Virus record (IMG/VR): IMGVR_UViG_3300044796_000662
Location: 186,001-250,000 of that record
Reading direction: 5' to 3' (one strand)
DNA: 64,000 nucleotides
The notes under the pieces are model-generated. The model did not search any database and was not told the origin of the DNA. It was given only the letters and a program-made list of their open reading frames with translations. Below, piece after piece: positions 15,524 to 55,905 of the stretch (its first letter is position 1; each line of letters starts with the position of its first letter). The translations under genes and the position numbers were made by a program.

Positions 15524-15531
15524 CTACACCG
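15524..15531 (-). promoter_or_regulatory. CGGTGTAG candidate promoter element
   Basis: Intergenic, 9 nt before ATG 15514; same motif at 26035, 26796, 28027, 55880. Confidence 0.65.
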
Positions 15532-15548
15532 CGATGGGCCCAAGCGGC

Positions 15549-15878
15549 TCAAGTTTTCTTCGCCTGGGACAGCGCCTCGAACTCGCTCATGGGCCGCTCG
15601 AAGAAGCAGAGCCGTTTGGCCCCGCTCTCGTCCGCGAGGGAGACGCCGCGGATGTAGTGCTGGACGCCCTTGTCATCGGGCCACAGGGGAAGAGGGCACT
15701 CGTCTACCCAGAAGAGCGCTCCTGAGGCCAGAACGATGAGGTATTCCTCAGGCTCCGCCCCAACCGCCGTCGTCGTCGCCTTCGTCACGGTCTTGACCGG
15801 GATAGCGTCGGTGATGCCCTGGTCCGGAGTCGTGCCATTCGTCATCGTGCCGTTCGTCGTCTTCATCTTGGTGCTCAT
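15549..15878 (-). CDS. Hypothetical protein
   Basis: Typical codon usage; overlaps 3' end of upstream ORF by 131 bp. Confidence 0.6.
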   Translation of the reverse strand: MSTKMKTTNGTMTNGTTPDQGITDAIPVKTVTKATTTAVGAEPEEYLIVLASGALFWVDECPLPLWPDDKGVQHYIRGVSLADESGAKRLCFFERPMSEFEALSQAKKT

Positions 15879-16350
15879 TTTCGAACTGCTCGTATTGCTC
15901 TCGACGGTAGATCTCGTCGAATCGAACCCAGACCCTCATCCACGGTTCCCGAGGGTTGTAGCGTAGGTAGCGCAGCCGTACCCCGCCACCACGGTACCCA
16001 TCATGGCAGTGACAGCCGCACTCGTGATGGCAGTGCGGCCGACAGATGGGACAGGGTACATGGACAAGATCTGCGAAGCCCGCAAGGATGCCTACACCAA
16101 TCGCTGGGAGCGGGACTGAAGCGATCAAGTCGCCGTGCCCCGAAACCCGGCTTCCAAGGAGGTGTATCTCCTTGACGACCTGCCCGTAGAAGGTCGCCGC
16201 TCCCGCAGCCGTGCCCCCAGCGAGAAACTGGTAGTCATAGGCAAGGGTTCCCACGCCGGCTGCGCGGCCGGTCATGAGGACCACATTTTGCGTGGAGCCC
16301 GTCAGGGTACCAACGCCACTGGCCTTGCCGGAGACGTTGAGGGTCGCCAT
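15748..16350 (-). CDS. Gly/Ala-rich virion accessory protein with Cys/His cluster
   Basis: GxAxGxGTL repeats, then CPICRPHCHHECGCHCHD. Confidence 0.6.
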   Translation of the reverse strand: MATLNVSGKASGVGTLTGSTQNVVLMTGRAAGVGTLAYDYQFLAGGTAAGAATFYGQVVKEIHLLGSRVSGHGDLIASVPLPAIGVGILAGFADLVHVPCPICRPHCHHECGCHCHDGYRGGGVRLRYLRYNPREPWMRVWVRFDEIYRREQYEQFENEHQDEDDERHDDEWHDSGPGHHRRYPGQDRDEGDDDGGWGGA

Positions 16351-16361
16351 CCGCTACCCCG

Positions 16362-16745
16362 TCAGGTTTCGGTGACGATGAGCTGTCCCGTGGGGAACAC
16401 GATCTGGTCGTTGACAAGAACGACGCGAGACGAACTCAGGGAGCTGAAGTAGAGAAGGTTGCCGCCCGACACGGAGTCAAGGAGGCCGAACGCTACAATC
16501 GTACCCCAAGAGCTGCTAGCGATGGGGAAAGAGACCGTCGTAGCGTTGTTCGTCTGCCCGTTGGTGGGAGAGACGAAGGTCACGGTCTGACGAGCGTAGC
16601 TGCCGCCCGTGACCTCAGTGCCCGAGGTGGTCGGTGTGGGGGACACCGTGTAGAGGGCCACGTAGATGGTCGTGGGCGCGACGAATACGCCGTTGAGCAG
16701 CACGTAGTTGAGGACGTTGTTGTCGAGGTACGTGCTCTTCGGCAT
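16362..16745 (-). CDS. Small virion/tail-fibre-associated beta protein (paralogue of 17641-18051)
   Basis: YVALYT..PT...GTEVTGGSYARQ.VTF...FP.A...WGTIVAFGL.D...GGNLLYF, a common phage structural family. Confidence 0.75.
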   Translation of the reverse strand: MPKSTYLDNNVLNYVLLNGVFVAPTTIYVALYTVSPTPTTSGTEVTGGSYARQTVTFVSPTNGQTNNATTVSFPIASSSWGTIVAFGLLDSVSGGNLLYFSSLSSSRVVLVNDQIVFPTGQLIVTET

Positions 16746-16749
16746 GGTC

Positions 16750-17145
16750 TTACCGAGGGGGCTTCATAAACGAAGCAACGAGGCCCGGAGTGGGCGTGGA
16801 GAGATTGTTGACCACGTCGTAGTCCTGCGCCTGAATCTGCGGGACTGACGTGTACGTGAGAATCACCCGCCAGTACCCCACGCCGATCGGCCGAAACCGA
16901 ACATTGTAGAACCCAGCGCTGCCCGGGATCTCGTTGAAGTACACGTTGCCAGACGCGACCTGCGCGTCAGGGACAGTCGTGCCATCCACAAGGCCCCACG
17001 GCTGGATAGCGTTGTTGAAGAAGAGCTGAAGGGTGAGCTGGCTTGGCGTCAGACCCGAAAGGCGTGTGAAGCCGTCCGACTGGAAGAAGTCGGGCTGGTC
17101 GATCACCGTCGCGTTGTTCTGAACGATCCTGCCACGCGTGCTCAT
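16750..17145 (-). CDS. Ig-like virion accessory protein
   Basis: EIPGSAGFYNVRFRPIGVGYWRVILTY beta-sandwich pattern. Confidence 0.6.
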   Translation of the reverse strand: MSTRGRIVQNNATVIDQPDFFQSDGFTRLSGLTPSQLTLQLFFNNAIQPWGLVDGTTVPDAQVASGNVYFNEIPGSAGFYNVRFRPIGVGYWRVILTYTSVPQIQAQDYDVVNNLSTPTPGLVASFMKPPR

Positions 17146-17148
17146 GGC

Positions 17149-17322
17149 TCACGGCCTCCGCATAGGGCGGAACACAACGACTTCCTCGGGCGCCGGCTGG
17201 TTGGCCAGCTCGGGCGGCGGATGCTTGCGCTTGATGTTGGCCCCAAGAGAGAAGGCCATCGACGCCCGGGTGTCCGTGGAAGCAGTCGCGATGAGGTTGG
17301 CCGAGAGCTGAATCTCGGCCAT
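17149..17322 (-). CDS. Small hypothetical protein (57 aa)
   Basis: Below ORF-track cutoff; MAEIQLSANLIATASTDTRASMAFSLGANIKRKHPP...RPMRRP* exactly fills the gap. Confidence 0.65.
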   Translation of the reverse strand: MAEIQLSANLIATASTDTRASMAFSLGANIKRKHPPPELANQPAPEEVVVFRPMRRP

Positions 17323-17323
17323 C

Positions 17324-17623
17324 TCAGGTCTTCCGGGTCGGGATGCTGAGCTGCTGCGGGAAGGTGGGCTGGGCGATGACCCGAAGAGGGGTCGCCGTAA
17401 GCACCACAGGCGGAAGCGGAGTCACGTGGTGCGCAACCGACATGAACACCGGCCCAAAGTAGGCTTCTGCCGAGATGTGTGCGATCTCCCCTGCCTTGTC
17501 GGAGAGAGACGCGCCCACGCTGGCGCTCGCAGAAACGGTGGAGTGGAGCGCGAAGTGCTCCGTGGCCCCCGCCGTAACGGTGGCCCCGGCGATGATGGTC
17601 GAGGCGATGAAGTAGGCGGTCAC
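17324..17623 (-). CDS. Ala/Ser-rich virion accessory protein
   Basis: Repetitive A/S/T pattern; between structural genes. Confidence 0.6.
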   Translation of the reverse strand: MTAYFIASTIIAGATVTAGATEHFALHSTVSASASVGASLSDKAGEIAHISAEAYFGPVFMSVAHHVTPLPPVVLTATPLRVIAQPTFPQQLSIPTRKT

Positions 17624-17640
17624 GTGCAGCCCTTACCCGG

Positions 17641-18051
17641 TCACTGCTCAGTGACGGAGAGCGAGGTACCCGCGAAGGAGACCGTGTCTCCGGAGCCGAC
17701 CGTCTTCGAAGACGTCAGGTTGCCGAAGTAGAGGATCGTCGAGTCAGGCGAGCCCGAGGCCGTCGCAGCGTTGCAGATGGCGCACGCCACGATGGTGCCC
17801 CATCCCGCGCCCGTCGCGGTCGGGAACGTGACCGTACCCGAGTTCGAGGTGCTGCCTCCCGAGGGAGCCGAGAACGTCACGGCCGTGCGGGCGTAGCCCG
17901 TACCCGAAGACGTGACCTCAGTGCCCGAGGTGGTCGGCGTCGGAGCGACCGTGTAGAGGGCCACGTAGACCGTCGAGGTGGACGTGTACGTACCGTTGGT
18001 CAGAAGCAACGCGAGCATCGCGTTGTCGAGGATCTGGGACTTGGCGGCCAT
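17641..18051 (-). CDS. Small virion/tail-fibre-associated beta protein (paralogue of 16362-16745)
   Basis: YVALYTVAPTPTTSGTEVT..GYARTAVTF...FPTAT..WGTIVA; SD and TTTATG upstream. Confidence 0.75.
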   Translation of the reverse strand: MAAKSQILDNAMLALLLTNGTYTSTSTVYVALYTVAPTPTTSGTEVTSSGTGYARTAVTFSAPSGGSTSNSGTVTFPTATGAGWGTIVACAICNAATASGSPDSTILYFGNLTSSKTVGSGDTVSFAGTSLSVTEQ

Positions 18052-18164
18052 GGTGGTTCCTTCTCTGAGCCAGCGAGCGGCATAAAAGAAAGCGGGCGCT
18101 GCCCAACGTCAGTGGTTGCGAAACTTCGACAGAAGAGCGAGGGTCTGGAGGAGCGACTTGGCGC

Positions 18165-18449
18165 TCAACTCATGTGACAGACCGACTTCAATGACTTAAT
18201 AGCGTTTGCGTAGGGCAGCGCTGCGACTTTTCCCTGGTTGTTGAACCAGGCGGTCTTCAGCTCTTCGATGTTGGAGACCGAAGTGTCGAAGACGAAGAAG
18301 ACGCGCCCGTTTTCTCTGTCCGTGCGCTTCATCTCCACCCCTGCGGTCTGGAGATACGCTGCGAAGTAGAGGTCCGGCGTGCGGAACGTGTTGTCCTCGC
18401 CGGGGGCGAACTTGTGGCCTGGTCTCTGCTGGCTCATCTGATTCCTCAT
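18165..18449 (-). CDS. DUF5659-like small protein
   Basis: TPDLYFAAYL..G...RVFFVF...V....Y..AIK.LK pattern. Confidence 0.6.
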   Translation of the reverse strand: MRNQMSQQRPGHKFAPGEDNTFRTPDLYFAAYLQTAGVEMKRTDRENGRVFFVFDTSVSNIEELKTAWFNNQGKVAALPYANAIKSLKSVCHMS

Positions 18450-18533
18450 CTTGGCTCCCCCAAGATCTGGGGGAGCCAGGAAACGTCTTTCCGATCCGAA
18501 TCTGGGTATGAATCTTTGCGGCCCTGCGGCCGA

Positions 18534-20054
18534 TCAGGTGACGGTGAACGCGATCGGGGCCGACAGGCTCCAAACGAGCGAACCGCTGCTCGTGTCAGGC
18601 AGGAGCGCGTTGGGGTTGAGGATCTTGACGCTCGACGACGAGATGTACGACGTCACGAGGAAGGATCCGTTGTTGCGGGTCGGGTACTCCGAGCCGTTGA
18701 TCGTCAACTGCGAACCGACCGCAGCGGACGTCATGTTCGTGAGGCCCGTCACGGTGACGTAGGTCCCGTCGAAGGACGAGAGCGTCGCCGCCGCACCGTA
18801 GACGGTGTTTGCCAGCGTGGTGAACCGCAGCTCCACCGTGGAGCCCGCGACGCCGAGCGCCGTGCCCGCGGAAGCAGGAACCGCAGGGAACGGGTGACCG
18901 GGCGGGTTCACCAGGAGCAGCGAAGCCGGGATGACGATCGAGGTCGGGGTGACCGAACCCTGAGTGCCGCCCGTCAACGTGTGGTTGATGAGCTTCTGCG
19001 ACAGCGTGACGGACGGAGCCTTGAGGCCGGGTCCGGGGCTCACGCCGGTCACGATGACCTTCGTGGAGTCGAAGTACTCGGTGACGCCGAGACCGACGCC
19101 CGTGATGGTGATGTCACCCGCGTTCGGCGTGTTGTGCACGGCGCCCGTGATCTCGGGGAACGCGAACGTGTAGGCCGTGTGGCCGTCGTTCTGCACCACC
19201 TGGATCGCCGGACCGTAGGCCGGAAGCGGGATGAGACGCGGGTTGGGGTTGAAGGACGAGCGCAGGAAGCCCGCGAGGTTGCCGATCGCGAAGCTCTTCT
19301 GGGCCACGTCCGTCTCGTTGAACTGCGGCGCGATGAGGTTCGCGATGTTCTGAGCGGCCGGAGCAGCTCCGAGGGTCGAAGTGATGGTCGCGGCGCGAAC
19401 GTCGATCGCACCCGTTGCCGGGGGGACCTGAACAGGGTTCAGGGCCGTGATGATGGCCGTCGCCGAGGGCATCGTGAAGTTCGCACCGCTCGTAGAGAAG
19501 CCGAGCGTAGCGTTGGCCGTCGAACCGTTGCCGTTCGTGTCCAGCCCGATGTACGACCCTACGCCAGGGACAGTGCTCTGAAGAACGAGCAGGGTGCCCG
19601 TGCTGTCCTGAGTCGCCGTGACCCCGACCCCCGCCGTCTTGAGGGCTGCGTTCACAGCCGCCAGAAGCGTGGTCATGGTGGCGTAGACGCCGTTGGCAAT
19701 CGTGGCCGCCACGAACGACCCCGTGGAGGTGTTCTTGACGCGGAGCACGTTGTTCGGGCTGCCGCTGCTCACGATGGTGACAGAGAAGGACACCGCCGTG
19801 CCTTCGATGCCTGCCGGCACGCCACCCGCGCCGAACTTTCCGGCCGGGATGGGGATCGTGATCGCCGGAGCCCCGTCAGGGGTGTCCGACGAGTACACGC
19901 CGGCGAGGAAGTTGGTGATCGCCGTGGCGTTCGGACGCGAGATGTAGCGCGTCTGAGTGACGGGATCGACCGGGAAGTTGGACTGGCTGGTGGGCTCCAG
20001 GTCGGACAAAAAGACCGGACCCGGCAGATCTCCGCGAATGACTCCGACGCGCAT
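18534..20054 (-). CDS. Virion structural protein (Thr/Gly/Ala-rich, IPT/Ig-like segments)
   Basis: Composition and beta-strand pattern; partial similarity to 20445-21062. Confidence 0.65.
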   Translation of the reverse strand: MRVGVIRGDLPGPVFLSDLEPTSQSNFPVDPVTQTRYISRPNATAITNFLAGVYSSDTPDGAPAITIPIPAGKFGAGGVPAGIEGTAVSFSVTIVSSGSPNNVLRVKNTSTGSFVAATIANGVYATMTTLLAAVNAALKTAGVGVTATQDSTGTLLVLQSTVPGVGSYIGLDTNGNGSTANATLGFSTSGANFTMPSATAIITALNPVQVPPATGAIDVRAATITSTLGAAPAAQNIANLIAPQFNETDVAQKSFAIGNLAGFLRSSFNPNPRLIPLPAYGPAIQVVQNDGHTAYTFAFPEITGAVHNTPNAGDITITGVGLGVTEYFDSTKVIVTGVSPGPGLKAPSVTLSQKLINHTLTGGTQGSVTPTSIVIPASLLLVNPPGHPFPAVPASAGTALGVAGSTVELRFTTLANTVYGAAATLSSFDGTYVTVTGLTNMTSAAVGSQLTINGSEYPTRNNGSFLVTSYISSSSVKILNPNALLPDTSSGSLVWSLSAPIAFTVT

Positions 20055-20071
20055 GTCAGGCTCCGTTTTCC

Positions 20072-20437
20072 TCAGGTGGTTGAACCAAGCTGACCCCGAA
20101 GGAGATCGAACTTGAGAAGTCGAAGGATCGCCCCGTAGTCCGAGTAGAACTGCGTGACCGCTTGGATGAACCGAAGCTGATCCGCCTTCCAGGTGAAGGT
20201 TGCCGTGCGCAAGTCGAGGCGCATGCGGCGAAGAAACTTGATGTATCGGTCACGACGATCGAGCTTGTCCAGCTCCGGCTCTGCTTCTGAGAGATGCTCG
20301 AAACGATGTTCGAGGTCGTGGATGAGCACCCGCACCTGCGCGCCCATGAGGAGGTTCCTTGGGCGCCAGCGGTTCTCGATCTGCATGAAGGCATCGCCTT
20401 CACGATCGATGAGCTGTCGGAGGAGCGGGAAGTCCAC
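20072..20437 (-). CDS. Hypothetical helical protein
   Basis: Fills gap between structural genes. Confidence 0.6.
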   Translation of the reverse strand: MDFPLLRQLIDREGDAFMQIENRWRPRNLLMGAQVRVLIHDLEHRFEHLSEAEPELDKLDRRDRYIKFLRRMRLDLRTATFTWKADQLRFIQAVTQFYSDYGAILRLLKFDLLRGQLGSTT

Positions 20438-20444
20438 GTCATCA

Positions 20445-21062
20445 TCAGGTCAGGGTGAAGGTGTTGCTGTTCTGCTCGTTGGCGTTGACGACCACGGTGT
20501 TGCCGGCAACCGTTGCCTGCCCCGTGAAGAGGGCAGCGGGGATGGTGATGGAGGTAGCCGTCACCGTGCCGCCTCCCCCGATGATCGCGGCCTGCGTGAA
20601 GACAGCCGGCGAAGGGGTGGTGCCCGCCGAACCCTTGGCGAAGGTCACGGTCGTGGTGTCCGGAGAGACCGAAGTGAGGGTCGTCCCAGTGACCGTGACC
20701 GGGCTCGCGCCGTGGACACAGGCCGTGACCACCGGAGCCGCGATCGATGCGGACGTGATGGTCGTCACCGTGATCAGCCCCGCCTGCTGGAGCTTGTAGA
20801 TCTTGCCGGTGCCCGCAGACATCGTGATGCGGGGGGTCTGGTTGACGTTGATGTACCCCTGCGTGCCCGAGTACCCGTACGCCTTGCGGGTGTACGGGAC
20901 GTAGCAGGACTGCTTGTCAGCGCCCGCAGCGCCGTTGCGCTTGAATGCCTTCTTGTCGGCCTGGGACCCGAGGCGATAGACTTCCTTGTTGGGAAGCCCG
21001 TCGTCGATGTCATCGACCAGCAGGGCACCTACCACGGTCTGGTTGTGAATGAGACGCAGCAT
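20445..21062 (-). CDS. Virion structural protein with C-terminal IPT/Ig-like domain
   Basis: VTVTGTTL...VTF...TATSITIP...VVVNANEQNSN.FTLT; SD GGGAG and TTATG upstream. Confidence 0.65.
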   Translation of the reverse strand: MLRLIHNQTVVGALLVDDIDDGLPNKEVYRLGSQADKKAFKRNGAAGADKQSCYVPYTRKAYGYSGTQGYINVNQTPRITMSAGTGKIYKLQQAGLITVTTITSASIAAPVVTACVHGASPVTVTGTTLTSVSPDTTTVTFAKGSAGTTPSPAVFTQAAIIGGGGTVTATSITIPAALFTGQATVAGNTVVVNANEQNSNTFTLT

Positions 21063-21158
21063 TGTCGCTCCCTACGGTGGTCCGTTCGATCTTGATCGAC
21101 GCATAAGAAGGAAAACGAGAGGAACCCGGTGAGTTTGGATTACTACCGGGTGCGAGCT

Positions 21159-21821
21159 TTACCTCGGGTTGGCCAGTGTGCAGGTCGCCGAGAAGTTCAC
21201 CGCACCACCCCCGCCACGAACCCAGAGGCTCCCCTGGACGCCCCAGAGCGTCTGATAGCCCGCGAACCCGAGCTTCGGGCCGACTTCCACTTCGGGTCCA
21301 CCCGCCTCGGTCGAGACGTAGAGGGTGTTGGTCCCGTCGTTGTTGGTGATCTGGAAGTTCTGCATCAAGCGAGGCAGATCGATCTGAAGCGAGTTCGCCG
21401 AGGCCGCTCCGCTCGGGGCGTTGCCCTGGATGGTCACGATCCCGATGCCGTGGTTGGCGCTGTCGGGAAGTACGAGCGTGGGGGCGCCCACGAGCGTCTC
21501 GGACCCTCCGGTGACCTGCGCAAACTGGAGCCAGAACGAGCTGGTATCCGTGATGCCGAAGGTCGCCGGGTTGAACACGATGCGGATGTTCCGGCCGCCA
21601 TTGCTCGCCGTGCCGCCCATAGGCTGCGCATCCACCACATTGGGGTTGATGCCGGGGTCAAGGTAGCCGACATTCGAGGACGTCAGGAACGTCGTGAACG
21701 ATCCCGAGTCGAAGTTGGCCGCCCACTTGAGGCGATAGCCGGTGACGCCATATGCGAACGGCGTCTGGATGTCCACGTAGTTTGGACGCCTGCGGATCAT
21801 ACCGAAGAGCCGGTTCATCAC
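21159..21821 (-). CDS. Probable virion structural protein
   Basis: Beta-rich; ITNNDGTNTLYVS..GGPE motif typical of small capsid accessory domains. Confidence 0.6.
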   Translation of the reverse strand: MMNRLFGMIRRRPNYVDIQTPFAYGVTGYRLKWAANFDSGSFTTFLTSSNVGYLDPGINPNVVDAQPMGGTASNGGRNIRIVFNPATFGITDTSSFWLQFAQVTGGSETLVGAPTLVLPDSANHGIGIVTIQGNAPSGAASANSLQIDLPRLMQNFQITNNDGTNTLYVSTEAGGPEVEVGPKLGFAGYQTLWGVQGSLWVRGGGGAVNFSATCTLANPR

Positions 21822-22246
21822 TTGGTCCCTTCTACAAGCGGATCATACGTTTGAGCGACCAGCTTCGCGGCGCTCTCCCCCAGGGTCTTTGAGGTCTCCA
21901 CCCGGGCGAACTCCCGGGCGTCCTTCCAGGTCCCAGTCTCGATGCCCTGGTAGTTGGCCTGGAGCTTGGGCTTGAACACATGGTCCCGCTCCCGACGCGC
22001 CATGACCTCACGGTGACGTGCGCGCCAAGCGTTCTCCTTCATGGCCTTGCTCTGCCAACCGCCAGACTCCCCGTCCTTCATGACGAACTGCACGCTGCTC
22101 GGATCGAAGAGGATCTGGCAGTGGGCGTCGCACTTGTTGCAGACGAGGTTCTTGGCACCCTTCTGGATGTCGTCGTAGTCGGCAAACGAGAGGCGAAGGT
22201 CGCCCGCGTCACCGCAGCCCAGGCATTGTGTCGTATAGACCGGCAT
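21818..22246 (-). CDS. FmdB-like zinc-ribbon protein
   Basis: MPVYTTQCLGCG...CNKC...F...GW. Confidence 0.75.
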   Translation of the reverse strand: MPVYTTQCLGCGDAGDLRLSFADYDDIQKGAKNLVCNKCDAHCQILFDPSSVQFVMKDGESGGWQSKAMKENAWRARHREVMARRERDHVFKPKLQANYQGIETGTWKDAREFARVETSKTLGESAAKLVAQTYDPLVEGTK

Positions 22247-22249
22247 CGT

Positions 22250-23143
22250 TCATTCCTTCGATTTGGGTTTGGATTTCGGGAGCTGCCACTTCTGAATCGT
22301 CCGTAGAACGGCCGCCACGTGCTTGCAGACGCGGTTCTGACCCTCAGGGTCCCGAATGACGGGCTCAGAGGCCGTTCCGCGGGGCTTGCCGTTGATGTAC
22401 CCCTCGCCCTTCGACCAGTGCTCCGGACCGAGCCACCGCCAGGCTGGGCACGAGCAGGCGAGGTGCAGGTCCATCTTCGTGACCTTCACGGCCTTGCCGC
22501 GCTCCGCCATGAGCTTGACGGCTCGGGGTCCGTTGCCGCAGTTCACGGCGAAGATCCAGCGCATGTTCGGGATGTCAGCGCGCTTGAGGTCCACGCTGCA
22601 CGAGTGCGAACGCTCGATGAACTTGGGGTTCAACCCCTCCTCGATGGCGTCCATCCGGGTTGCCACTCGGATGCCATGGCCGGTCTCTGCGGGAACAACC
22701 AGCTCGTGAGCTGTTCGGAGCAGATGAGCTTCGACCACATAAGCGACTGAGGCGTAGTGCTTGTGCTTCCGGTCATCACGGTAGGGGTAGTCCGTGACCG
22801 TGGGGTCGCCTTTCGGACGGCCGCCAGGACCCGTGTACGTGGGCTTGAAGTCCTCGTGATGCGGCCGATCCCCCTCGGGGTCATCCTGGGGCTTGGCCAG
22901 GTCGTCCGGACCGTCCTTGCGGTAGATGGACCCCGGCTCGGCCTTGTCGAACTCCCGGATGTCACCCTCAGGCTTGTTGAAGGTGCTCGTGCCCGGGATG
23001 TCCTTGTCCAGCGAGCGCCCCTTGTCAGAGGGACCGCCGCCTGGAAGACCCGACTCCGCCACGGACGGGGGCATCCGCTTCTGACCGTAGGCTGGTCGAG
23101 AAACGAGAGGCTGCGTCAACGTAGCGGAGCGGTCCTCTCCCAT
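22250..23143 (-). CDS. SWIM-type zinc-finger protein with disordered N-terminus
   Basis: ACSCPAWRW...RVCKHVAAVL (CxC...CxH). Confidence 0.75.
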   Translation of the reverse strand: MGEDRSATLTQPLVSRPAYGQKRMPPSVAESGLPGGGPSDKGRSLDKDIPGTSTFNKPEGDIREFDKAEPGSIYRKDGPDDLAKPQDDPEGDRPHHEDFKPTYTGPGGRPKGDPTVTDYPYRDDRKHKHYASVAYVVEAHLLRTAHELVVPAETGHGIRVATRMDAIEEGLNPKFIERSHSCSVDLKRADIPNMRWIFAVNCGNGPRAVKLMAERGKAVKVTKMDLHLACSCPAWRWLGPEHWSKGEGYINGKPRGTASEPVIRDPEGQNRVCKHVAAVLRTIQKWQLPKSKPKSKE

Positions 23144-23146
23144 ACG

Positions 23147-24196
23147 TCACTTGTGCTGGTTCTTGACGACGTCCTTGTTCTTCTCCCAGTGATCCGCCGC
23201 CTCTTCGAGCTGCGCGTCCGTCATGGCAGGGTTCGCGTCCTTGAAACCCTTCATGACGTCCTCACGGGACGAAGCCTGCTGGTAGATGGCCGCCGCCACC
23301 TGAGCGCCGACTTGCTGCATCTGCTGCTGCGACTGTTGCTGCATCGGCTGGATCTGGTCCGCGATGACGTTGCGGAGCATGTTCGCGAGCGCGAGACGGC
23401 TCGGAGCCTTGCCCTCTTGGGGGTTGAGCAGGCCGGCAGCGACCTCACGAAAAACCGCAGCGGCCTTTGCTGCCGGAACCGAGGCGCGCTTGGTGTTGCC
23501 TTCGAGGGCGCCAAGCAGGGCCACGACGCGGTTCATCGGAACCTTGCCCGTACCTTCGGTCTGCGCCGCGAGGGCGAGGAACTGTTCAGCAGCTTGCTTC
23601 GGAGTCATCATCGGAGTGCCCTTTCCAGTTGAAATAGGGGTGTCACCCCCAGCGGTTTTCGCAGCACCAACATCGGTGCCCTCACTCATGTCCTTCGGCT
23701 CGCCCTCGACGAGGCGGCGAACCCCCACGGTCGGCTCCGTGCCGGCCCACTCCGAAGAGCGGCGCTTCAAATAGCGAAGGCGAACGTCCTGGAGCGCATC
23801 CTCCAGCTCGTCCGCCTTCTCCGGCTTGAGCGTGTCCTTGATCTCTTCGTAGTCGAGACGGGCGGCAGCGAGCGCGGATGCGTCGAGCGCCTTCTCCATC
23901 TTGAAGAGGGCATCGGGGATGCCGTGGATCAGGTGGGCGGCAACCTCGAAGAAGTGGTCCCGTTGAGGGGACTTCTCGATGAGATCGGTCGCCTCCTTGA
24001 CGTACTTCTTGAGCTGGGCGCAGCGCAAACGCGCATCCCCCAACTCCTCCAAGAGGTAGACCGTGATTCCGGCCGCGACCTTGTCAGCGGCGGCCTTGTC
24101 CACCCCGTGGGCGACGAGGTACGAGGCAAGACGGGCAGGCAACGTGGTGCTGCCTGCCGCTGTCTTGTTCATGCAACGCTCGATGTCGTAGGGCAC
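23147..24196 (-). CDS. Hypothetical helical protein (putative internal head protein)
   Basis: SD GGGAGAGG and TTATC upstream; several K-x-A motifs. Confidence 0.65.
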   Translation of the reverse strand: MPYDIERCMNKTAAGSTTLPARLASYLVAHGVDKAAADKVAAGITVYLLEELGDARLRCAQLKKYVKEATDLIEKSPQRDHFFEVAAHLIHGIPDALFKMEKALDASALAAARLDYEEIKDTLKPEKADELEDALQDVRLRYLKRRSSEWAGTEPTVGVRRLVEGEPKDMSEGTDVGAAKTAGGDTPISTGKGTPMMTPKQAAEQFLALAAQTEGTGKVPMNRVVALLGALEGNTKRASVPAAKAAAVFREVAAGLLNPQEGKAPSRLALANMLRNVIADQIQPMQQQSQQQMQQVGAQVAAAIYQQASSREDVMKGFKDANPAMTDAQLEEAADHWEKNKDVVKNQHK

Positions 24197-24239
24197 CGCA
24201 GACCTCTCCCGTTCACGGAGAGGGAGCTGATAAGGTGTT

Positions 24240-26803: not shown

Positions 26804-26804
26804 T

Positions 26805-51471: not shown

Positions 51472-51530
51472 TGTATGGACGCTCCGGTGCTCACGGAACG
51501 TGGCCGATAAAAGAAACCGCGCCGGTTCGG

Positions 51531-51749
51531 CTAGTTGGGCCGGGTCGGAAAGACCTGTTTGGCCACAAAACGCGACAAACCGTCGAGGCGATGCATCGCC
51601 CGAAAAAGCCGGTGACGCACGCGACCCTGCGTCAGCCCCAGGGCGGCGGCTGCCGCCTTGATGGGGTAGGGCTCGTTCCGACTTCTCATCTCATCCAGGG
51701 TCCGAAGGATCTGGACGTCCATGTCGTCGATGATGTCAGAGGACTTCAT
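51531..51749 (-). CDS. Small HTH protein (copy of second HTH of upstream gene)
   Basis: Start MKSSD 51749; DVQIL...AAALGLTQGRVRHRLFRA. Confidence 0.7.
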   Translation of the reverse strand: MKSSDIIDDMDVQILRTLDEMRSRNEPYPIKAAAAALGLTQGRVRHRLFRAMHRLDGLSRFVAKQVFPTRPN

Positions 51750-52371
51750 CACCGCCACGATTGGCCCACTGGGGGAGTTTGACCTCGCGGAGGATGTTGA
51801 AGCGCTTCGAGCTGATCGCGTTGAAGACCTTGTGGTACGGGATGAACTTCCCATCCTTGGCGGCGGCGTCCTTGAGGGTCTTGACCGCCTTGAAGAAGCG
51901 GTGTCTCACGCGCCCCTGTGTGAGCCCCAGGCGGCTGGCCACCTCACTCTGGCAGGTCGTCTGCCACATGCCGATGAGGATGTCCACGTCGATGTCCTTG
52001 AAGACTTCGGGCAGATCGCGCCGCAAGTCCTCTTCGGTCACGGGCGGGATGCTGAGCAGGAACTTGATGCGCTGCAAGCCTCGATCGAGTCGATAGCTGA
52101 TCGCAGCCTGCGTCACCCCGAAGATCTCGGCGATGTCCGCCTGACGCTTCTTCTGGATGTAGTAGAGCTGGATGAGATCCGCCTCCCTTTGGGGGATGCG
52201 ATTGAGCAGAGGCATGATGCGGTCTTCGTAGTCCCCGTCTTGGAGGATCTTCTCGACCGTATCGTCCTCGGGCTCTTGTACCGGCTCTTCGTCGCTGTAG
52301 GGATCGTCGTTGGTGGCAAAGCGGTTGGCGAGTTCGGACGGGTCAACCGGAATCACGTAGCCGATGGTCAT
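51736..52371 (-). CDS. Tandem sigma70 region-4-like HTH protein
   Basis: LNRIPQREADLIQLYY....QADIAEIFGVTQAAISYRLDRG and QSEVASRLGLTQGRVRHR; ATG 52371 with GAGGGA SD. Confidence 0.8.
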   Translation of the reverse strand: MTIGYVIPVDPSELANRFATNDDPYSDEEPVQEPEDDTVEKILQDGDYEDRIMPLLNRIPQREADLIQLYYIQKKRQADIAEIFGVTQAAISYRLDRGLQRIKFLLSIPPVTEEDLRRDLPEVFKDIDVDILIGMWQTTCQSEVASRLGLTQGRVRHRFFKAVKTLKDAAAKDGKFIPYHKVFNAISSKRFNILREVKLPQWANRGGDEVL

Positions 52372-52408: not shown

Positions 52409-54385
52409 TCACCGAGCGCGTTCGTTGAAGAACACGGCCAGGATAGGCTCGGCCTGTACATCCACATCTGTGAGTCGCTCAGCGGCGACCTTCTGATCTG
52501 GGTTTGGCACGACCTCCGTGAGGGGAACGTCCCGGAGGGTCATGATGTCGAGGTTCAAACGAACCTGTGCTTCAGCGTCCCGGAGGCACTGATAGCGGAG
52601 CTTAGTCAAGCCTGCCAGATTCGAGGCGTAGATGCCATCTATGGTTCCGTAGAGCTGGACCAACCCCAGAAGCACCTTCTGTGGAACGGTCGGAACCCCA
52701 GGCAGGTTGTCTGACGAATCCCCAAGCAGTGCGCGAAGAGTCACGATCTGTGACGGCCCCACACCCCACTCCTGCGTCAGTGCGTCGATGTCGTACAGCA
52801 CTTCCTTTCGCTTACCTTGTGCCGGCGTCAGTAGACGGTCGGTCTCTGTCACGAGCTGTAGAAGGTCACGGTCCGAGGAGAGGACCACGTTGTTCTGGCC
52901 CTTCAAGGTGCCACGCAGGAGGCTTGCGATGGCATCGTCGGCCTCCTCCCCCTCGTTGTAGAGCTGTGTAACCCCCAGAATCGGGAGCACCTCGCGCAGC
53001 CAGGCCACCTGGTCCCAGCGCACGCCCCCTGTCTCTTCTTCCGCGAAGCCGCTCGAACGGTTGGCCTTGTAATCGGCGTACTTGGCCTTGCGGGTTCGAT
53101 TCGAGCCATCCCAGACCACGTAGATGCTGGCCCCTGGGAACCGCTTGAGCAGGCTTGCGGTCGAGCGCAGAAAGCCGAAGAGCACGCCCGTGTGCCTCTG
53201 TTGCGTGTCCCGCATGTCCGACATGCCGGGCGCGTAGAAGCAGCGATAGGCGAGGTTGAAACCGTCGATGATGACGTTCTGGACTTCCACGCTGGTCTCC
53301 TCAATCTCGCGCTCGATCTCCGAGACGTCGTCTGACAGGTTGTCCAGGCTCTCTTGCAAGTCCTGCAACGTGAGCCACTTGAAGTACCGTCCCTCGATCT
53401 CCGAGAAGGGCGTCTCGACGAGGCTCTCGCGGACAAGGGGTACGAGACCGTCCCAACGCTGTGTGAGACCATCAAGCAGGATCGCTCGGTCCCCTTGCTC
53501 CTTGAGCTTGCTCGCATCGAGGGGGATGTAGAACGACCGAACGAGGTTGGAGCGATGCTCCAGCCCCTCAGCCCAGTCGTTCAGTTGCGTATAGACGTCG
53601 AGTCTCGGACGTATCCGGGTGATGAGCGTGGGCGCGGTAAGTGCTGTCTGGATGGTCGTGAAACTCTCGACCTTGGACACCCAAGACTGGAACTGGAGAT
53701 ACTCCTGGTAGTGCTTGTTCAGGCGCGCGAAGCCGACGAGCTTTGGGGCCTTGAGCAGATCGTAGAAGTCGTTGAACCAGTCACGGACGCCTGCGAAGCG
53801 GTCCATGGCCGGAGCCTTGGGCGCCTTGGAGACGAGCCGGAGGAAGCTCCGGGGCAGCGTGATGATCGAGTCCTTGGAGCGTAGAAGAACCCGTACCTGG
53901 ACCTTGTCCTCTTCGGGAATCTCCTCGATGACCTTCGCCTGGATCTGGCGATAGGCCCCTGAGGTGATGAGAACCGTGTCGTCGATACCGATCCCCTGGT
54001 CGGTCTCGACATGGATCTGCCGCTTCATCTTGTCGATGGCGGAGTTCTCGACGAAGGCTAGCTGCCGGACAGGACGCCCCCCGTTCTCGGGTCGGACGAT
54101 CTTCGTGAGCACCTTCTGGACGTACTTGGAGTTGTCCAGTCTGTTGTAAAGCGTATCGGGGTGCTTGTGCCGAATGAACGCGTAGCCATCGACGAGGTAG
54201 TGCACTACCCGGTCCTCACCGATCTGCGTGACCGCAGCCGGAATGAACACTTCGGCGCCCTTCACTGCGTAGGTGATGGAACGCCGGACGATGTCCGGGT
54301 CCTCCCCTTCGGCCTTGGAACTCAGTTCCAAGATGACCCACTGGTTGGGATCGCTCGTCACAACGACTACGCCCTCCTGGGCCAT
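52409..54385 (-). CDS. NusG (NGN+KOW) fused to Pol I-type 5'-3' exonuclease/flap endonuclease
   Basis: N-term WVIL...EVFIP...LVDGYAFI...V.ITSGAY....AKV.E; C-term IIDGFNLAYR, VVWDG, YKANR, EADD, SSDRDLLQL, GDSSDNLPGV. Confidence 0.85.
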   Translation of the reverse strand: MAQEGVVVVTSDPNQWVILELSSKAEGEDPDIVRRSITYAVKGAEVFIPAAVTQIGEDRVVHYLVDGYAFIRHKHPDTLYNRLDNSKYVQKVLTKIVRPENGGRPVRQLAFVENSAIDKMKRQIHVETDQGIGIDDTVLITSGAYRQIQAKVIEEIPEEDKVQVRVLLRSKDSIITLPRSFLRLVSKAPKAPAMDRFAGVRDWFNDFYDLLKAPKLVGFARLNKHYQEYLQFQSWVSKVESFTTIQTALTAPTLITRIRPRLDVYTQLNDWAEGLEHRSNLVRSFYIPLDASKLKEQGDRAILLDGLTQRWDGLVPLVRESLVETPFSEIEGRYFKWLTLQDLQESLDNLSDDVSEIEREIEETSVEVQNVIIDGFNLAYRCFYAPGMSDMRDTQQRHTGVLFGFLRSTASLLKRFPGASIYVVWDGSNRTRKAKYADYKANRSSGFAEEETGGVRWDQVAWLREVLPILGVTQLYNEGEEADDAIASLLRGTLKGQNNVVLSSDRDLLQLVTETDRLLTPAQGKRKEVLYDIDALTQEWGVGPSQIVTLRALLGDSSDNLPGVPTVPQKVLLGLVQLYGTIDGIYASNLAGLTKLRYQCLRDAEAQVRLNLDIMTLRDVPLTEVVPNPDQKVAAERLTDVDVQAEPILAVFFNERAR

Positions 54386-55860
54386 GTGCGCTCGAATTCC
54401 CGTCGCCAGTCTTCCGGCGTCAGAATGCGATTCATCTCGTCCTCTGTTCCTTGATGGAAGGACAGCGGAACGTCAATGTTGCCTGGGTTGGAACGGCTCC
54501 GAGGCCGCCCCAACGGCACAGCCTTGTGGTCTTCGGAGGTGAGAGCGTAAGGGTCCCCTGAGCCGATAGCTCCGATGCCGTCCGCCCGCATCTTGCCGTT
54601 GCCCCCATTGGTTGCCGCGTGGACGATGGGGACTTGGGGTGCCGGAGAGGGGGAGGGTGGCGCCGCCGTTGTCACGGGAGACGGTGCAGACACCGGCTGT
54701 GACACCGCAGGAGGCGTTGAGGGGGTAGCTTGAACCGCTGCGGTCTGAACAGGGACCGAAGCGACGGCCATGGGTGCAGACACGGACAGCACAAGAGGCT
54801 GCGCCCCCATCTGTTGGGGAACGGCGCCGTTGGACTGCGCGAGGCTCACGATGTCGCAGACAAGGCTGATCCGCGACACTGCCCGATGCCGAAGGAAGTA
54901 TTCGGCCAGCTTGGTGCACCCCGTGGTGAACCGCTGGTAGACCTGCTCGGCCAGTTGCCGGTCCACGTACACGAAGTCGGCCGCCATGTTGTTGGCAAGC
55001 CGGAACGAGTTCATGGCCGCCTCGGCAAGACCTGCGGCCACCTGGTCAGCGGGCACTCGCTCGCATGCCTGGTCCACGAGTTCGAGAGCCTGCTTGGGGT
55101 TCCCGAGCGCAAGGAGGATCTGGTAGTACGTCGAGACGACACTGAGGTGTAGGTACTCTCGAACAGACTCGACCGTGACCGACCCCATCTGGGCGATCAT
55201 CTCCAGCTTGTTCAAGATGTCCCGGACGTGCCCGCCCGAGTGATCGATCACGATCAACACCGCGTCGTCTTGGTACTCGACCTTCTCGGTTTCGAGCACC
55301 ATTCGCATCCGCCCGAGCACGTCCTCACGAGTGACCTTACGGATCGGGTACGTCTCGCAGCGGCTCTGGATGGTCCCGCGGATGTTCTGAGGCTCGGTCG
55401 TACAGAAGATACCGAGGAGCTTCTTCTCCTCGATGGGCTTGAGCAGGACGTCCTGAGCCTCCTTGCTCATCCGGTGCGCCTCGTCGAAGAGGTAGATGCG
55501 GATGGGCGCCCCCATGGGCGGCATGTACGGGAGGTCTTCGAGCAGGTCACGGACGTTGGCAACGCCGCCGTTACTAGCCGCGTCGCGCTCCGTGAAGGCA
55601 CTGGGCTGGTCCTCCAGAATCGCGAGGCACTGCTCGCAGACGTTGCAGGGCTCCCACTCCTCACGGTTCAAGTTCTGACAGAGGGCCGCCCTCGCCAGCA
55701 CACGGGCAAGGGTGGTCTTGCCCTGCCCGTGACCGCCCGCGAAGATGTAGGACGTGTTCAGGATGGTCCCGTTCCTCAAGCGAGCCTTGATGAGCTGGAC
55801 GGATCCCTCCTGACCGAGCACCTCGGAGAACTTGCGCGGGCGGTACTTAGTGTCCCACAT
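54367..55860 (-). CDS. dnaX: DNA polymerase III gamma/tau-like clamp loader subunit
   Basis: KYRPRKFSEVLGQ, GGHGQGKTT, C..PCNVCEQC Zn module, DEAH, SRC, Pro-rich C-terminal linker. Confidence 0.92.
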   Translation of the reverse strand: MWDTKYRPRKFSEVLGQEGSVQLIKARLRNGTILNTSYIFAGGHGQGKTTLARVLARAALCQNLNREEWEPCNVCEQCLAILEDQPSAFTERDAASNGGVANVRDLLEDLPYMPPMGAPIRIYLFDEAHRMSKEAQDVLLKPIEEKKLLGIFCTTEPQNIRGTIQSRCETYPIRKVTREDVLGRMRMVLETEKVEYQDDAVLIVIDHSGGHVRDILNKLEMIAQMGSVTVESVREYLHLSVVSTYYQILLALGNPKQALELVDQACERVPADQVAAGLAEAAMNSFRLANNMAADFVYVDRQLAEQVYQRFTTGCTKLAEYFLRHRAVSRISLVCDIVSLAQSNGAVPQQMGAQPLVLSVSAPMAVASVPVQTAAVQATPSTPPAVSQPVSAPSPVTTAAPPSPSPAPQVPIVHAATNGGNGKMRADGIGAIGSGDPYALTSEDHKAVPLGRPRSRSNPGNIDVPLSFHQGTEDEMNRILTPEDWRREFERTWPRRA

Positions 55861-55879
55861 GGTGCTTGGTTCGTGTCAG

Positions 55880-55905
55880 CTACACCGTTCAGGAATCCTG
55901 AACGG
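55880..55905 (-). promoter_or_regulatory. CGGTGTAG motif overlapped by a 21-bp palindrome
   Basis: Motif 55880-55887; CCGTTCAGGA-A-TCCTGAACGG at 55885-55905. Confidence 0.55.

What the first reader, a model, noticed from the sequence alone, without database searches (positions are those of the whole stretch)
15524..55887. Second promoter class, CGGTGTAG, apparently driving leaderless mRNAs
Seen: an exact 8-mer at 15524, 26035, 26796, 28027 and 55880, all intergenic on the coding strand. Spacing to ATG is 9, 9, 9, 8 and 19 nt; the four close cases have little room for an SD and no shared -35. It marks only accessory or replication genes, never structural ones. Roughly one chance hit per strand would be expected in 64 kb. 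Inference: an early/middle single-element promoter read by a phage-encoded or phage-modified RNA polymerase, with the TSS at or near the ATG.
Basis: partly seen in the sequence, partly recalled or inferred. Interest (0 to 1): 0.65.

Follow-up and report, generated by a model that had tools for sequence, protein, structure and literature searches.

The report
Conserved promoter-like motif hugging start codons
A seven-base signal, CGGTGTA, sits 9-11 bases in front of about sixty early, replication and accessory genes of a giant peat-soil phage and of its relatives; it is most likely a phage-specific promoter that makes messenger RNAs with almost no leader, but no transcription start has been measured.

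Summary
CGGTGTAG occurs 6 times in the window against 1.3 expected. Five copies lie on the coding (minus) strand, 8-19 nt before an ATG.

The window belongs to a 363-kb fragment of a jumbo phage from peat. Genome-wide the core is YGGTGTA. About 59 genes have a start codon 9-13 nt after it, with the peak at 10. No -35 element accompanies it.

The pattern GGTGTA-N9-11-ATG is enriched 3- to 30-fold over a reversed control in all ten related 240-530 kb phage records tested (48-64% GC). Orthologous genes keep it.

It also precedes tmRNA and tRNA genes, and it sits back to back in 35-38-nt divergent gaps. It differs by one or two bases from the -10 part of a second, clearly bipartite promoter class in the same genomes.

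I read it as a -35-less promoter with a start 6-11 nt downstream, giving leaders of 0-5 nt.

No RNA polymerase gene was found. A divergent sigma and a near-invariant protein with two sigma-region-4 domains are present, so redirected host polymerase is favoured over a phage polymerase.

No transcription-start data exist, because the one metatranscriptome is held only as contigs. This is a new variant of a known kind.

The parts
15524..15531 (-). Class-B motif CGGTGTAG, 9 nt before the ATG of the 142-aa gene 15086-15514 (no Pfam family)
   Evidence: position-weight-matrix score 15.9 bits
26035..26042 (-). Class-B motif, 9 nt before the ATG of the 149-aa gene 25576-26025 (no Pfam family). The orthologue in relative G001 also carries GGTGTA.
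   Evidence: 15.8 bits
26796..26803 (-). Class-B motif, 9 nt before the ATG of the 99-aa gene 26487-26786
   Evidence: 12.9 bits
28027..28034 (-). Class-B motif, 8 nt before the ATG of the LAGLIDADG homing-endonuclease gene 27056-28018. It lies about 30 nt after an 18-bp-stem terminator-like hairpin at 28066-28105 that follows the capsid-like gene.
   Evidence: 14.9 bits
55880..55887 (-). Class-B motif, 19 nt before the ATG of the clamp-loader-like gene 54367-55860 (DNA_pol3_delta2), with no Shine-Dalgarno in between. The G001 orthologue has GGTGTA at the canonical 10 nt before its GTG.
   Evidence: 13.9 bits
28889..28896 (+). Sixth exact copy, antisense inside the capsid-like gene, with no start codon at 9-11 nt. 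Best read as a chance occurrence.
51736..52371 (-). 211-aa protein with two sigma-region-4-like helix-turn-helix domains and no region 2. It is one of the most conserved proteins of the clade and a candidate reader or co-factor of the motif (inferred, not shown).
51531..51854 (-). 107-aa protein with one sigma-region-4-like helix-turn-helix, next to the 211-aa gene

Best explanation
YGGTGTA is the core element of a phage-specific promoter class that has no -35 element ('class B'). It drives early/middle genes: replication, repair, DNA methylation, homing endonucleases, small accessory genes, and some tRNA and tmRNA genes.

Transcription starts 6-11 nt downstream of the final A, that is, at the start codon or at most about 5 nt before it. 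The messages therefore carry no usable Shine-Dalgarno leader and are translated as leaderless or near-leaderless mRNAs.

The enzyme is most likely the host RNA polymerase redirected by a phage-encoded factor. Candidates are the divergent sigma (G000 310065-311120) and the near-invariant protein with two sigma-region-4 domains (window 51736-52371).

Shown: the motif, its spacing, its conservation across the clade and at orthologues, its presence before RNA genes, and the classes of genes it marks. Inferred: that it acts at the DNA level, where transcription starts, and which factor reads it.
For: 1. Strength of the signal. GGTGTA-N9-11-ATG occurs 51 times in the genome. The 59 other permutations of the same letters average 5.5. 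A position weight matrix at 11 bits or more gives 104 hits, 76 of them in the 11% of the genome that is intergenic.

2. Conservation across the clade. The same pattern against a reversed control gives 127 vs 6, 111 vs 5, 89 vs 3, 58 vs 8, 90 vs 9, 55 vs 8, 68 vs 10, 28 vs 10, 34 vs 6 and 38 vs 9 in ten relatives with 48-64% GC.

3. Conservation at orthologues. Orthologues of motif-marked genes keep the motif: 13 of 16 against 10 of 144 for other genes in G001, and 7 of 18 against 3 of 118 in G004.

4. It is not tied to translation. High-scoring sites (14.4-14.5 bits) lie 15 nt before the tmRNA 5' end and 19 nt before a tRNA-Pro/His pair. In G004 four tRNAs have it 9, 10, 14 and 21 nt upstream; in G006 one tRNA has it 7 nt upstream.

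5. Divergent gene pairs. Motif-marked genes are the first gene after a strand switch in 19 of 62 cases against 40 of 323 internal genes (odds ratio 3.1, p = 8e-4). Ten of 14 first genes with divergent gaps of 30-59 nt carry it, often as back-to-back TACACC..GGTGTA pairs.

6. Kinship with a bona fide promoter. The same genomes hold a bipartite class A: TTGATT, TTGAAA or TTGAAC, then 16 nt, then (C/G)GTTGTA, then 5-8 nt, then ATG. When the ATG is further away, a Shine-Dalgarno follows instead. Its -10 part differs from CGGTGTA by one base in G001 and G004 and by two in G000.

7. Position of the TA. It lies 12/11 nt before the start codon, the published signature of leaderless genes (PMC3160421).

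8. Candidate factors. All four aligned members of the sigma-like family match Sigma70_r2, and the structural neighbours of the model are almost all sigma region 2 domains, Z 5.1-6.3. The 211-aa protein is 66-97% identical among the 120 homologues listed, of 793 found. Its identity falls with the motif: 80, 77 and 67% where the motif is strong, 45% where it is weak, 27% (partial) where it is absent.
Against: - No transcription start has been measured. The only RNA library holding this phage is stored as assembled contigs, which say nothing about 5' ends.
- About half of the sites carry a G-rich run at Shine-Dalgarno distance.
- Fourteen of the 40 co-directional motif-marked genes lie only 10-29 nt behind the upstream gene, where no new promoter is strictly required.
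- Terminator-like hairpins upstream are not enriched: 5 of 17 against 18 of 90.
- A pyrimidine at -1 is not significantly enriched: 64% against 57%.
- The T expected at -7 of a sigma-70-type hexamer is not conserved.
- The two ways of placing the start, 6-7 nt or 10-11 nt after the A, cannot be told apart.
- The link to either candidate factor rests on co-conservation in a handful of related genomes.
- The record is a fragment: the same proteins lie on a 570-kb contig. Several very large ORFs have no annotation.
Confidence: 0.65

Rival explanations
1. The motif acts in the RNA. It would be a start-associated sequence that enhances or represses translation initiation, comparable to the start-associated sequences of Cluster K mycobacteriophages or to an operator for a RegA-like translational repressor. 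Transcription would start further upstream.
For: The distance to the start codon is very tight, 9-11 nt. About half of the sites have a G-rich, Shine-Dalgarno-like run between motif and ATG. Many sites lie at 10-29-nt junctions inside same-strand gene runs.
Against: The motif precedes tmRNA and tRNA genes in three genomes. GGTG ends 12 nt from the AUG, too far for pairing with the CACC of the 16S tail, and the rest of the motif is not complementary to that tail (reasoning from the standard 16S 3' end). It is nearly identical to the -10 part of a bipartite promoter class. Back-to-back copies fill divergent gaps of 35-38 nt, leaving no room for other promoters.
Confidence: 0.15
2. It is a promoter, but the unmodified host holoenzyme reads it through its housekeeping sigma, as a host-type extended -10 promoter for leaderless genes. 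No phage factor would be needed.
For: A TA 12/11 nt before the start codon is the generic bacterial signature of leaderless genes, reported among others for Acidobacteria, Actinobacteria and Deinococcus-Thermus (PMC3160421). In the 48%-GC relative G006 the bases after GGTG read TA(A/G)TA(T), which resembles a -10 hexamer. The nearest cultured relative infects an acidobacterium.
Against: The CGGTG part is invariant across phages of 48-64% GC, whereas the bipartite class-A promoters differ between the same genomes. The T at -7 is not conserved in the high-GC members. TG sits one base closer to TA than in the canonical TGnTATAAT. The host is unknown, so host promoters could not be examined.
Confidence: 0.15
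3. A phage-encoded RNA polymerase reads the motif. It could lie in the missing part of the genome or be hidden in one of the very large unannotated ORFs.
For: The record is a fragment of about 363 of 570 kb. ORFs of 2773, 1499, 1347 and 791 aa have no family match. Thermus phage P23-45 hides an RNA polymerase inside its tape-measure protein (PMC10770324).
Against: No RNA_pol_Rpb2_6 match was found in this record or in five relatives, three of them complete. No Rpb1_2 match was found in this record. Sigma-like factors are present instead, which is the usual pattern for jumbo phages without their own polymerase (PMC7824862).
Confidence: 0.07
4. The motif is an RNA-processing site. A phage or host endoribonuclease would cut long transcripts just before start codons and so create short-leader mRNAs.
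For: The distance to the AUG is fixed. Several sites lie directly after tRNA 3' ends in the tRNA region.
Against: This does not explain the back-to-back copies in divergent gaps, the copies that follow terminator-like hairpins, or the similarity to the -10 element of class A.
Confidence: 0.04

Closest known systems
T4-type late promoters (TATAAATA), read by host core polymerase with the phage sigma gp55, gp33 and the sliding clamp
   Same: One short element without a -35. It is repeated many times in the genome, conserved across a whole phage group, and read (here by inference) through a phage-encoded sigma-like factor on the host core enzyme.
   Different: The sequence is G-rich and centred near -14 relative to the ATG. 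It marks replication and accessory genes, not late structural genes. The messages have no leader. No gp55 or gp33 homologue was sought or shown. The comparison with T4 rests on textbook knowledge.
Extended -10 promoters used after remodelling of sigma region 4 (Thermus phage P23-45 gp39; T4 AsiA/MotA middle promoters; PMC4124052)
   Same: Recognition does not depend on a -35 element. It uses a TG-containing extension directly upstream of a TA-initiated -10 region, and it forms one step of a temporal switch away from -10/-35 promoters. A -10/-35 class also exists in this phage.
   Different: TG abuts TA (GGTGTA), whereas the canonical form is TGnTA. The T at -7 is not conserved. The invariant part is CGGTG. 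No gp39, AsiA or MotA homologue was identified. The start lies at or next to the start codon.
TANNNT about 12 nt before the start codon, the bioinformatic signature of leaderless genes (PMC3160421)
   Same: At the modal spacing of 10 nt, the T of TA lies 12 nt before the A of the ATG, as in leaderless genes of Actinobacteria, Deinococcus-Thermus and Acidobacteria.
   Different: The information here lies upstream of TA, in CGGTG, not in the hexamer. The signal belongs to a phage clade, not to a host genome.
Start-associated sequences of Cluster K mycobacteriophages (own knowledge: Pope et al. 2011, PLoS One; not re-read here)
   Same: A short repeat immediately upstream of the start codons of a subset of phage genes, at a near-fixed distance.
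   Different: Those sequences contain the ribosome-binding site and are thought to act in translation. This motif lacks complementarity to the 16S tail, also precedes tRNA and tmRNA genes, and resembles a -10 element.
ECF-sigma promoters (GAAC-like -35, CGT-like -10)
   Same: The sister class A in the relatives reads TTGAAC or TTGAAA, then 16 nt, then CGTTGTA. The clade encodes a sigma with only regions 2 and 4.
   Different: Class B has no -35 at all, which ECF sigmas normally require.

Membership tests
Sigma-70-family -10/-35 promoter | A -35 hexamer 16-18 bp upstream of the -10 element | tested here: not met
   The logo of 59 sites shows under 0.2 bit at every position from -45 to -2. The consensus scan of window 15000-30000 found no sigma-70-type site.
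Sigma-70-family -10/-35 promoter | A -10 hexamer TAnnnT with A at -11 and T at -7 | tested here: inconclusive
   TA is invariant and lies 12/11 nt from the ATG at the modal spacing. The position that would be -7 is G in G000 (35 of 59) and T in only 39% of sites in the 48%-GC relative.
Extended -10 promoter | TG one base upstream of the hexamer (TGnTAnnnT), with activity independent of a -35 | tested here: inconclusive
   TG is invariant but abuts TA, with no spacer base. Independence of a -35 fits the logo, but activity was not tested.
Leaderless mRNA | The primary 5' end lies at the start codon, or within 5 nt of it | not testable with these tools
   The metatranscriptome X2 holds the region only as contigs of 2.3 and 12.5 kb. 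Geometry and the distances to tRNA genes (7-21 nt) put the start within 7 nt of the final A if the closest tRNA (7 nt, G006) is a true target, otherwise within 9-11 nt.
Leaderless mRNA | No Shine-Dalgarno sequence, and a strong preference for AUG | tested here: inconclusive
   28 of 59 sites have no SD-like word and the rest have G-runs. ATG is used in 83% against 66% of other genes, but the starts of the other genes come from my own crude caller.
T4-type late promoter system | A single -10-like element, no -35, many copies | tested here: met
T4-type late promoter system | A gp55-like truncated sigma, a gp33-like co-activator and dependence on the sliding clamp | not tested
   A sigma with region 2 plus a C-terminal helix-turn-helix, and a protein with two sigma-region-4 domains, were found. 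No gp55 or gp33 profile was run and no functional link is shown.
T4-type late promoter system | Drives late structural genes | tested here: not met
   The marked genes encode helicases, ligase, methylases, clamp loader, AAA/ClpX-like ATPases and a homing endonuclease. Structural genes carry another motif, TCTTAT(G/C)C, with SD-bearing leaders.
Start-associated sequence (translation signal) | Contains the ribosome-binding site and is confined to protein-coding genes | tested here: not met
   The conserved part does not fit the anti-SD, and the motif precedes tmRNA and tRNA genes.
Promoter of a phage-encoded RNA polymerase (phiKZ/AR9, T7 or N4 type) | A phage RNA polymerase gene in the genome | tested here: inconclusive
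   No beta or beta' Pfam match in G000, and no beta match in five relatives. The T7-type search had a failed control. The large orphan ORFs remain unexplained.

The most novel reading that the evidence does not exclude
The near-invariant 211-aa protein, made of two sigma-region-4-like helix-turn-helix domains and lacking region 2, is itself the specificity factor. It would bind CGGTG at about -15 and recruit the host core or holoenzyme to promoters that have neither a -35 nor a proper -10 hexamer. That would yield leaderless messages, and even tRNAs without a 5' leader, across a whole clade of uncultivated 400-570 kb soil and freshwater phages. This would be a way of recognising promoters not described for any sigma or appropriator.
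Probability: 0.15. Interest if true: 0.8.

Novelty: new variant of a known kind. Interest (0 to 1): 0.55.

Why it matters
Huge phages of soil and freshwater are known almost only from metagenomes, and nothing is known about how they schedule gene expression.

This work gives a clade of 240-570 kb phages a readable regulatory code with three motif classes:
- a bipartite class before small early genes;
- YGGTGTA before replication and accessory genes;
- TCTTAT(G/C)C before structural genes.

It also yields a concrete and cheap hypothesis: a -35-less promoter producing near-leaderless mRNAs, read through a phage sigma-like factor on the host polymerase.

The motif can be used to correct start-codon calls, to delimit transcription units and to assign genes to temporal classes in hundreds of related contigs.

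Tried and rejected
- RNA evidence. One run search and one read-laying found a peat metatranscriptome holding 99% of the words of window 24-30 kb. It is stored as contigs only, so it gives no starts, strand or levels. It is not counted as evidence of transcription.
- Exact scan of viral contigs for the class-A promoter pattern. It gave more than 100 single-copy chance hits and was useless.
- Clamp-loader search for relatives. It gave one distant contig (L017) whose 21-kb stretch held no GGTGTA at the start-codon spacing; the terminase query worked.
- The 22-kb terminase neighbourhoods. They were uninformative because the structural module carries few class-B sites; whole-record scans were needed.
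- Host identification through the ligase in bacterial genomes. It found nothing. The host remains unknown, and Acidobacteriota is only a lead, from a 28% terminase match to Tunturiibacter phage Tunturi_5.
- Tunturi_5 sigma gp3 compared with the clade's sigma family. No significant relation.
- Terminator enrichment upstream of the motif and pyrimidine enrichment at -1. Both not significant.
- The idea that TAG or TAA at the end of the motif serves as the upstream gene's stop codon. Rejected by inspection of the window sites.
- The idea that GGTG acts as a displaced Shine-Dalgarno. Rejected on spacing.
- Foldseek on both models. No hit at E of 0.001 or better. The sigma assignment rests on Pfam plus the all-against-all structural search, with modest Z values.
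- Tools not used: the costly representative-protein search and complex prediction.
Full report
**1. The observation**

The exact 8-mer CGGTGTAG occurs six times in the window. Five copies lie on the minus strand, at 15524, 26035, 26796, 28027 and 55880. One lies on the plus strand at 28889. Dinucleotide-preserving shuffles give 1.27 matches, and none of 100 reaches six.

Nearly all genes of the window run on the minus strand. The five minus-strand copies are therefore intergenic and on the coding strand. The plus-strand copy is antisense inside the capsid-like gene and has no start codon nearby.

**2. Where the window comes from**

The window is bases 186001-250000 of a 362,937-bp IMG/VR virus record with 62.6% GC.
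- It carries 53 tRNA genes and a tmRNA.
- It holds a head module with portal, large terminase and a prohead-protease-like protein.
- Its replication genes include family-A DNA polymerase, clamp loader, primase-like Toprim, NAD ligase, helicases and ribonucleotide reductase.
- DNA runs from peat hold it.
- Identical proteins lie on a 569,965-bp contig, so the record is a fragment.
- The terminase finds 42 related loci in IMG/VR, many on contigs of 240-530 kb.
- In the phage collection the nearest records are an uncultured 485-kb phage (46% identity) and Tunturiibacter phage Tunturi_5 (28%).

**3. The real motif**

Genome-wide the exact 8-mer occurs 41 times, against 14 for the reversed control.

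I called 385 genes with a crude codon-usage caller of my own. The most enriched words in the 50 nt before genes are GGTGTA (64 genes, 3.8 expected) and CGGTGTA (48 genes, 2.1 expected).

Fifty-nine genes have a start codon 9-13 nt after GGTGTA. The spacings are 10 nt (27 genes), 11 (13), 9 (12) and 12-13 (7). The logo reads (C 44 / T 12)GGTGTA(G 31 / A 13) followed by three weakly G/purine-rich positions. There is no information anywhere from -45 to -2.

GGTGTA-N9-11-ATG occurs 51 times; the 59 other permutations of the same six letters average 5.5. A weight matrix at 11 bits or more gives 104 hits, 76 of them in the 11% of the genome that is intergenic.

**4. Two other motif classes give the context**

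Class A is a plain bipartite promoter: GGTTGATTC, 14 nt, GGGTTGTAGT. It has 16 copies in this genome, none in the window.
- In 11 copies an ATG follows 7 nt after GTTGTAG, with no Shine-Dalgarno.
- In most of the other copies that precede a gene (leaders of 13-37 nt), a GGAGG, GAGGG or GGGAG-like word lies in the leader.
- This is what a promoter with a fixed start does when the gene is either leaderless or leadered.
- In relative G004 the class reads GGTTGAAAGA, 14 nt, (A)CGTTGTAG, 4 nt, ATG, in about 30 copies. In G001 it reads GGTTGAACC...CGTTGTA.
- Its -10 part therefore differs from CGGTGTA by a single base in G001 and G004 and by two in G000.

Class C, (T)TCTTAT(G/C)C, lies 13-80 nt before genes of the structural block, with SD-bearing leaders. 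Six copies are in the window.

Genes without any of these motifs show the usual GGAG/GAGG signal 5-8 nt before the start, so the host uses Shine-Dalgarno initiation.

**5. Which genes carry class B**

All those with a family match belong to DNA metabolism or are accessory or selfish genes:
- a UvrD-like helicase and an SNF2 helicase;
- NAD-dependent ligase;
- N6/N4 and Dam methyltransferases;
- AAA and ClpX-like ATPases;
- the clamp loader;
- a LAGLIDADG endonuclease.

None is structural. Class A precedes small proteins of 54-400 aa. The three classes thus look like an early, middle and late programme.

**6. Conservation**

Whole-record scans for GGTGTA-N9-11-ATG, against the reversed pattern, give:
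- G001-G005: 127 vs 6, 111 vs 5, 89 vs 3, 58 vs 8, 90 vs 9;
- G006-G010: 55 vs 8, 68 vs 10, 28 vs 10, 34 vs 6, 38 vs 9.

These records have 48-64% GC and terminases 56-70% identical to ours. Five are complete by CheckV, four of them with terminal repeats.

The modal spacing shifts slightly between genomes: 9-10 nt in G004 and G006, 10 in G000, 10-11 in G001.

Orthologues of class-B genes keep the motif in 13 of 16 cases in G001, against 10 of 144 for other genes. In G004 the figures are 7 of 18 against 3 of 118. The proteins are only 30-70% identical.

The clamp-loader site of the window is the odd one, with 19 nt from the 8-mer. Its G001 orthologue has GGTGTA exactly 10 nt before its GTG. The G004 orthologue has no motif but has an AAGGGGG word 8 nt before the start.

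The motif is weak in the 485-kb uncultured phage (17 vs 6) and absent from Tunturi_5 (5 vs 5).

**7. DNA signal or RNA signal?**

Four observations favour a promoter.

(a) The motif precedes genes that are not translated.
- It lies 15 nt before the tmRNA 5' end (Rfam 94 bits) and 19 nt before a tRNA-Pro/His pair. Both sites score 14.4-14.5 bits.
- In G004 four tRNAs, including the CUA-anticodon tRNA, have it 10, 14, 21 and 9 nt upstream.
- In G006 a tRNA-Tyr has it 7 nt upstream.

(b) It is three times more frequent before the first gene after a strand switch: 19 of 62 against 40 of 323, p = 8e-4. Ten of 14 first genes with divergent gaps of 30-59 nt carry it. Several gaps of 35-38 nt consist of little more than two back-to-back copies, each with its 10-nt spacer.

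(c) It resembles the -10 part of class A.

(d) GGTG ends 12 nt from the AUG, too far for pairing with the 16S tail, and the rest of the motif is not complementary to that tail.

Clear single cases also exist. The homing-endonuclease gene of the window follows an 18-bp terminator-like hairpin by about 30 nt and has only this motif before it.

The counter-evidence should be weighed:
- about half of the sites have a G-run at Shine-Dalgarno distance;
- 14 sites lie 10-29 nt behind the preceding gene;
- terminators are not enriched upstream;
- no 5' end has been seen, because the one RNA library holding the phage is kept as contigs.

**8. Where transcription would start**

Two readings remain.

Reading 1: TA occupies -12/-11, as in the published TANNNT signature of leaderless genes about 12 nt before the start codon (PMC3160421). 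The start is then the A of the ATG.
- C precedes the ATG in 58-70% of sites.
- In G004 two tRNA 5' ends lie at the same 9-10 nt as the start codons.
- In the 48%-GC relative the following bases read TA(A/G)TA(T).

Reading 2: the final A corresponds to -7 and the start lies 6-7 nt further on.
- The seventh base after the final A is a purine in 73% of sites, and G in 74% of the modal-spacing subset.
- Class A in G004 is then exactly leaderless under the same geometry.
- Every RNA gene lies at least 7 nt away.

Either way the leader is 0-5 nt long and cannot hold a Shine-Dalgarno sequence.

**9. Who reads it**

No beta or beta' domain of a multisubunit polymerase was found in this record, and no beta domain in five relatives. 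The T7-type search was uninformative because its control rang nowhere. None of the large ORFs scanned matches a polymerase of transcription, but several have no match at all.

The clade does encode a divergent sigma.
- All four aligned members match Sigma70_r2 (best E = 7e-7) and have a C-terminal LuxR/region-4-like helix-turn-helix.
- The model (pLDDT 72) has as structural neighbours almost only sigma region 2 domains, at modest Z of 5.1-6.3, split by an insertion.
- This protein evolves fast, 26-33% identity between genomes, as do the class-A promoters.
- In three relatives its gene follows TTGAC(T/A/G), 13-18 nt, TA-type sequences that look like ordinary host promoters.

By contrast, the 211-aa product of window 51736-52371 has two sigma-region-4-like helix-turn-helix domains and no region 2.
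- The 120 homologues listed, of 793 found, are 66-97% identical. It is better conserved than the terminase.
- Its identity tracks the motif: 80, 77 and 67% in G001, G004 and G005; 45% in the phage with a weak motif; 27% over a part in Tunturi_5.

An invariant DNA element paired with an invariant DNA-binding protein is suggestive. But the sample is small and confounded by relatedness, so this step is inference. Jumbo phages that lack their own polymerase typically carry sigma factors (PMC7824862).

**10. Comparison with known systems, and verdict**

The logic resembles three known systems:
- T4 late promoters, with one element and a phage sigma;
- the switch to -35-independent extended -10 promoters by P23-45 gp39 or T4 AsiA (PMC4124052);
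- the leaderless-gene signature (PMC3160421).

It differs in sequence, in where the information lies (upstream of TA), in the gene class it marks and in the absence of a leader.

Full-text searches for this motif, or for promoters of huge phages, found no description. The huge-phage survey mentions phage sigma-70 and AsiA-like genes but no promoter motifs.

I therefore rate it a real, clade-wide feature and a new variant of a known kind. The phage-polymerase option is disfavoured.

Noticed in passing
outside the window: G000:C1 2488-2515(+), 51775-51802(-), 58760-58787(+), 78725-80097 (four copies, both strands), 119639-119666(+), 317055-320582 (three copies), 353230-359362 (five copies): Class-A bipartite promoter: GGTTGATTC, 14 nt, GGGTTGTAGT, with the ATG 7 nt after GTTGTAG or a longer leader that carries a Shine-Dalgarno. 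It has 16 copies, before small genes. Relatives have their own versions, TTGAAAGA...ACGTTGTAG in G004 and TTGAACC...CGTTGTA in G001, which look like ECF-type promoters.
   Followed up: partly
window, minus strand: 3081-3087, 5961-5967, 18080-18086, 21101-21107, 26429-26435, 51505-51511: Third motif class, (T)TCTTAT(G/C)C, 13-80 nt upstream of genes in and around the structural block, followed by SD-bearing leaders. It is probably the late promoter class. About 15 copies genome-wide.
   Followed up: partly
G000:C1 269102-303336 (minus strand), outside the window: 51 of the record's 53 tRNA genes, plus a one-piece tmRNA (tag ANDNGVAQARAA; Rfam 94 bits), interspersed with small ORFs. Many of those ORFs carry the class-B motif directly after the preceding tRNA.
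   Followed up: partly
G000:C1 21351-21503 (minus strand); G004:C1 35459-35532: A tRNA with anticodon CUA (amber suppressor; ARAGORN calls it tRNA-Pyl) next to an odd tRNA-like gene. In G004 its counterpart has the class-B motif 10 nt upstream. Under table 11 my gene calls cover 89% of the genome, so there is no sign of global recoding, but a late-stage reassignment of TAG was not examined.
   Followed up: no
window 27056-28018 (-) and 26050-26412 (-): A LAGLIDADG homing endonuclease with a C-terminal helix-turn-helix is inserted right behind the capsid-like gene, with its own terminator and promoter-like motif. A Vsr-like very-short-patch endonuclease gene lies 1.6 kb further on, preceded by a class-C motif.
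   Followed up: partly
window 6907-15228 (-): An ORF of 2773 aa with no Pfam or PHROG match, next to other large orphan ORFs of 1347 aa (34833-38876) and 1499 aa (G000 180373-184872). Their function is unknown. Given the P23-45 precedent of a polymerase hidden in a tape-measure protein, they deserve a structural search.
   Followed up: partly
L208:1701-1900(-), L209:1226-1425(+), L210:1687-1886(-) (upstream of the sigma-like genes of G003, G004, G005): The sigma-like genes are preceded by ordinary-looking TTGAC(T/A/G), 13-18 nt, TA(G/A)(G/A) sequences with long leaders. In G004 a class-A promoter lies there as well. This suggests that the host holoenzyme expresses the sigma first.
   Followed up: no
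window 24001-30000: A peat metatranscriptome (run X2) holds 99% of the sampled words of this stretch, as contigs of 2.3 and 12.5 kb. Soil, lake and other peat DNA runs hold fragments with a few substitutions. The phage, or close strains of it, therefore recurs across samples.
   Followed up: partly
G005:C1 54657-54680: Two divergent genes whose ATGs are only 18 nt apart. The whole gap is a palindrome of two class-B motifs (GGTGTA GAGG TACACC), so each motif lies in the other's spacer.
   Followed up: no
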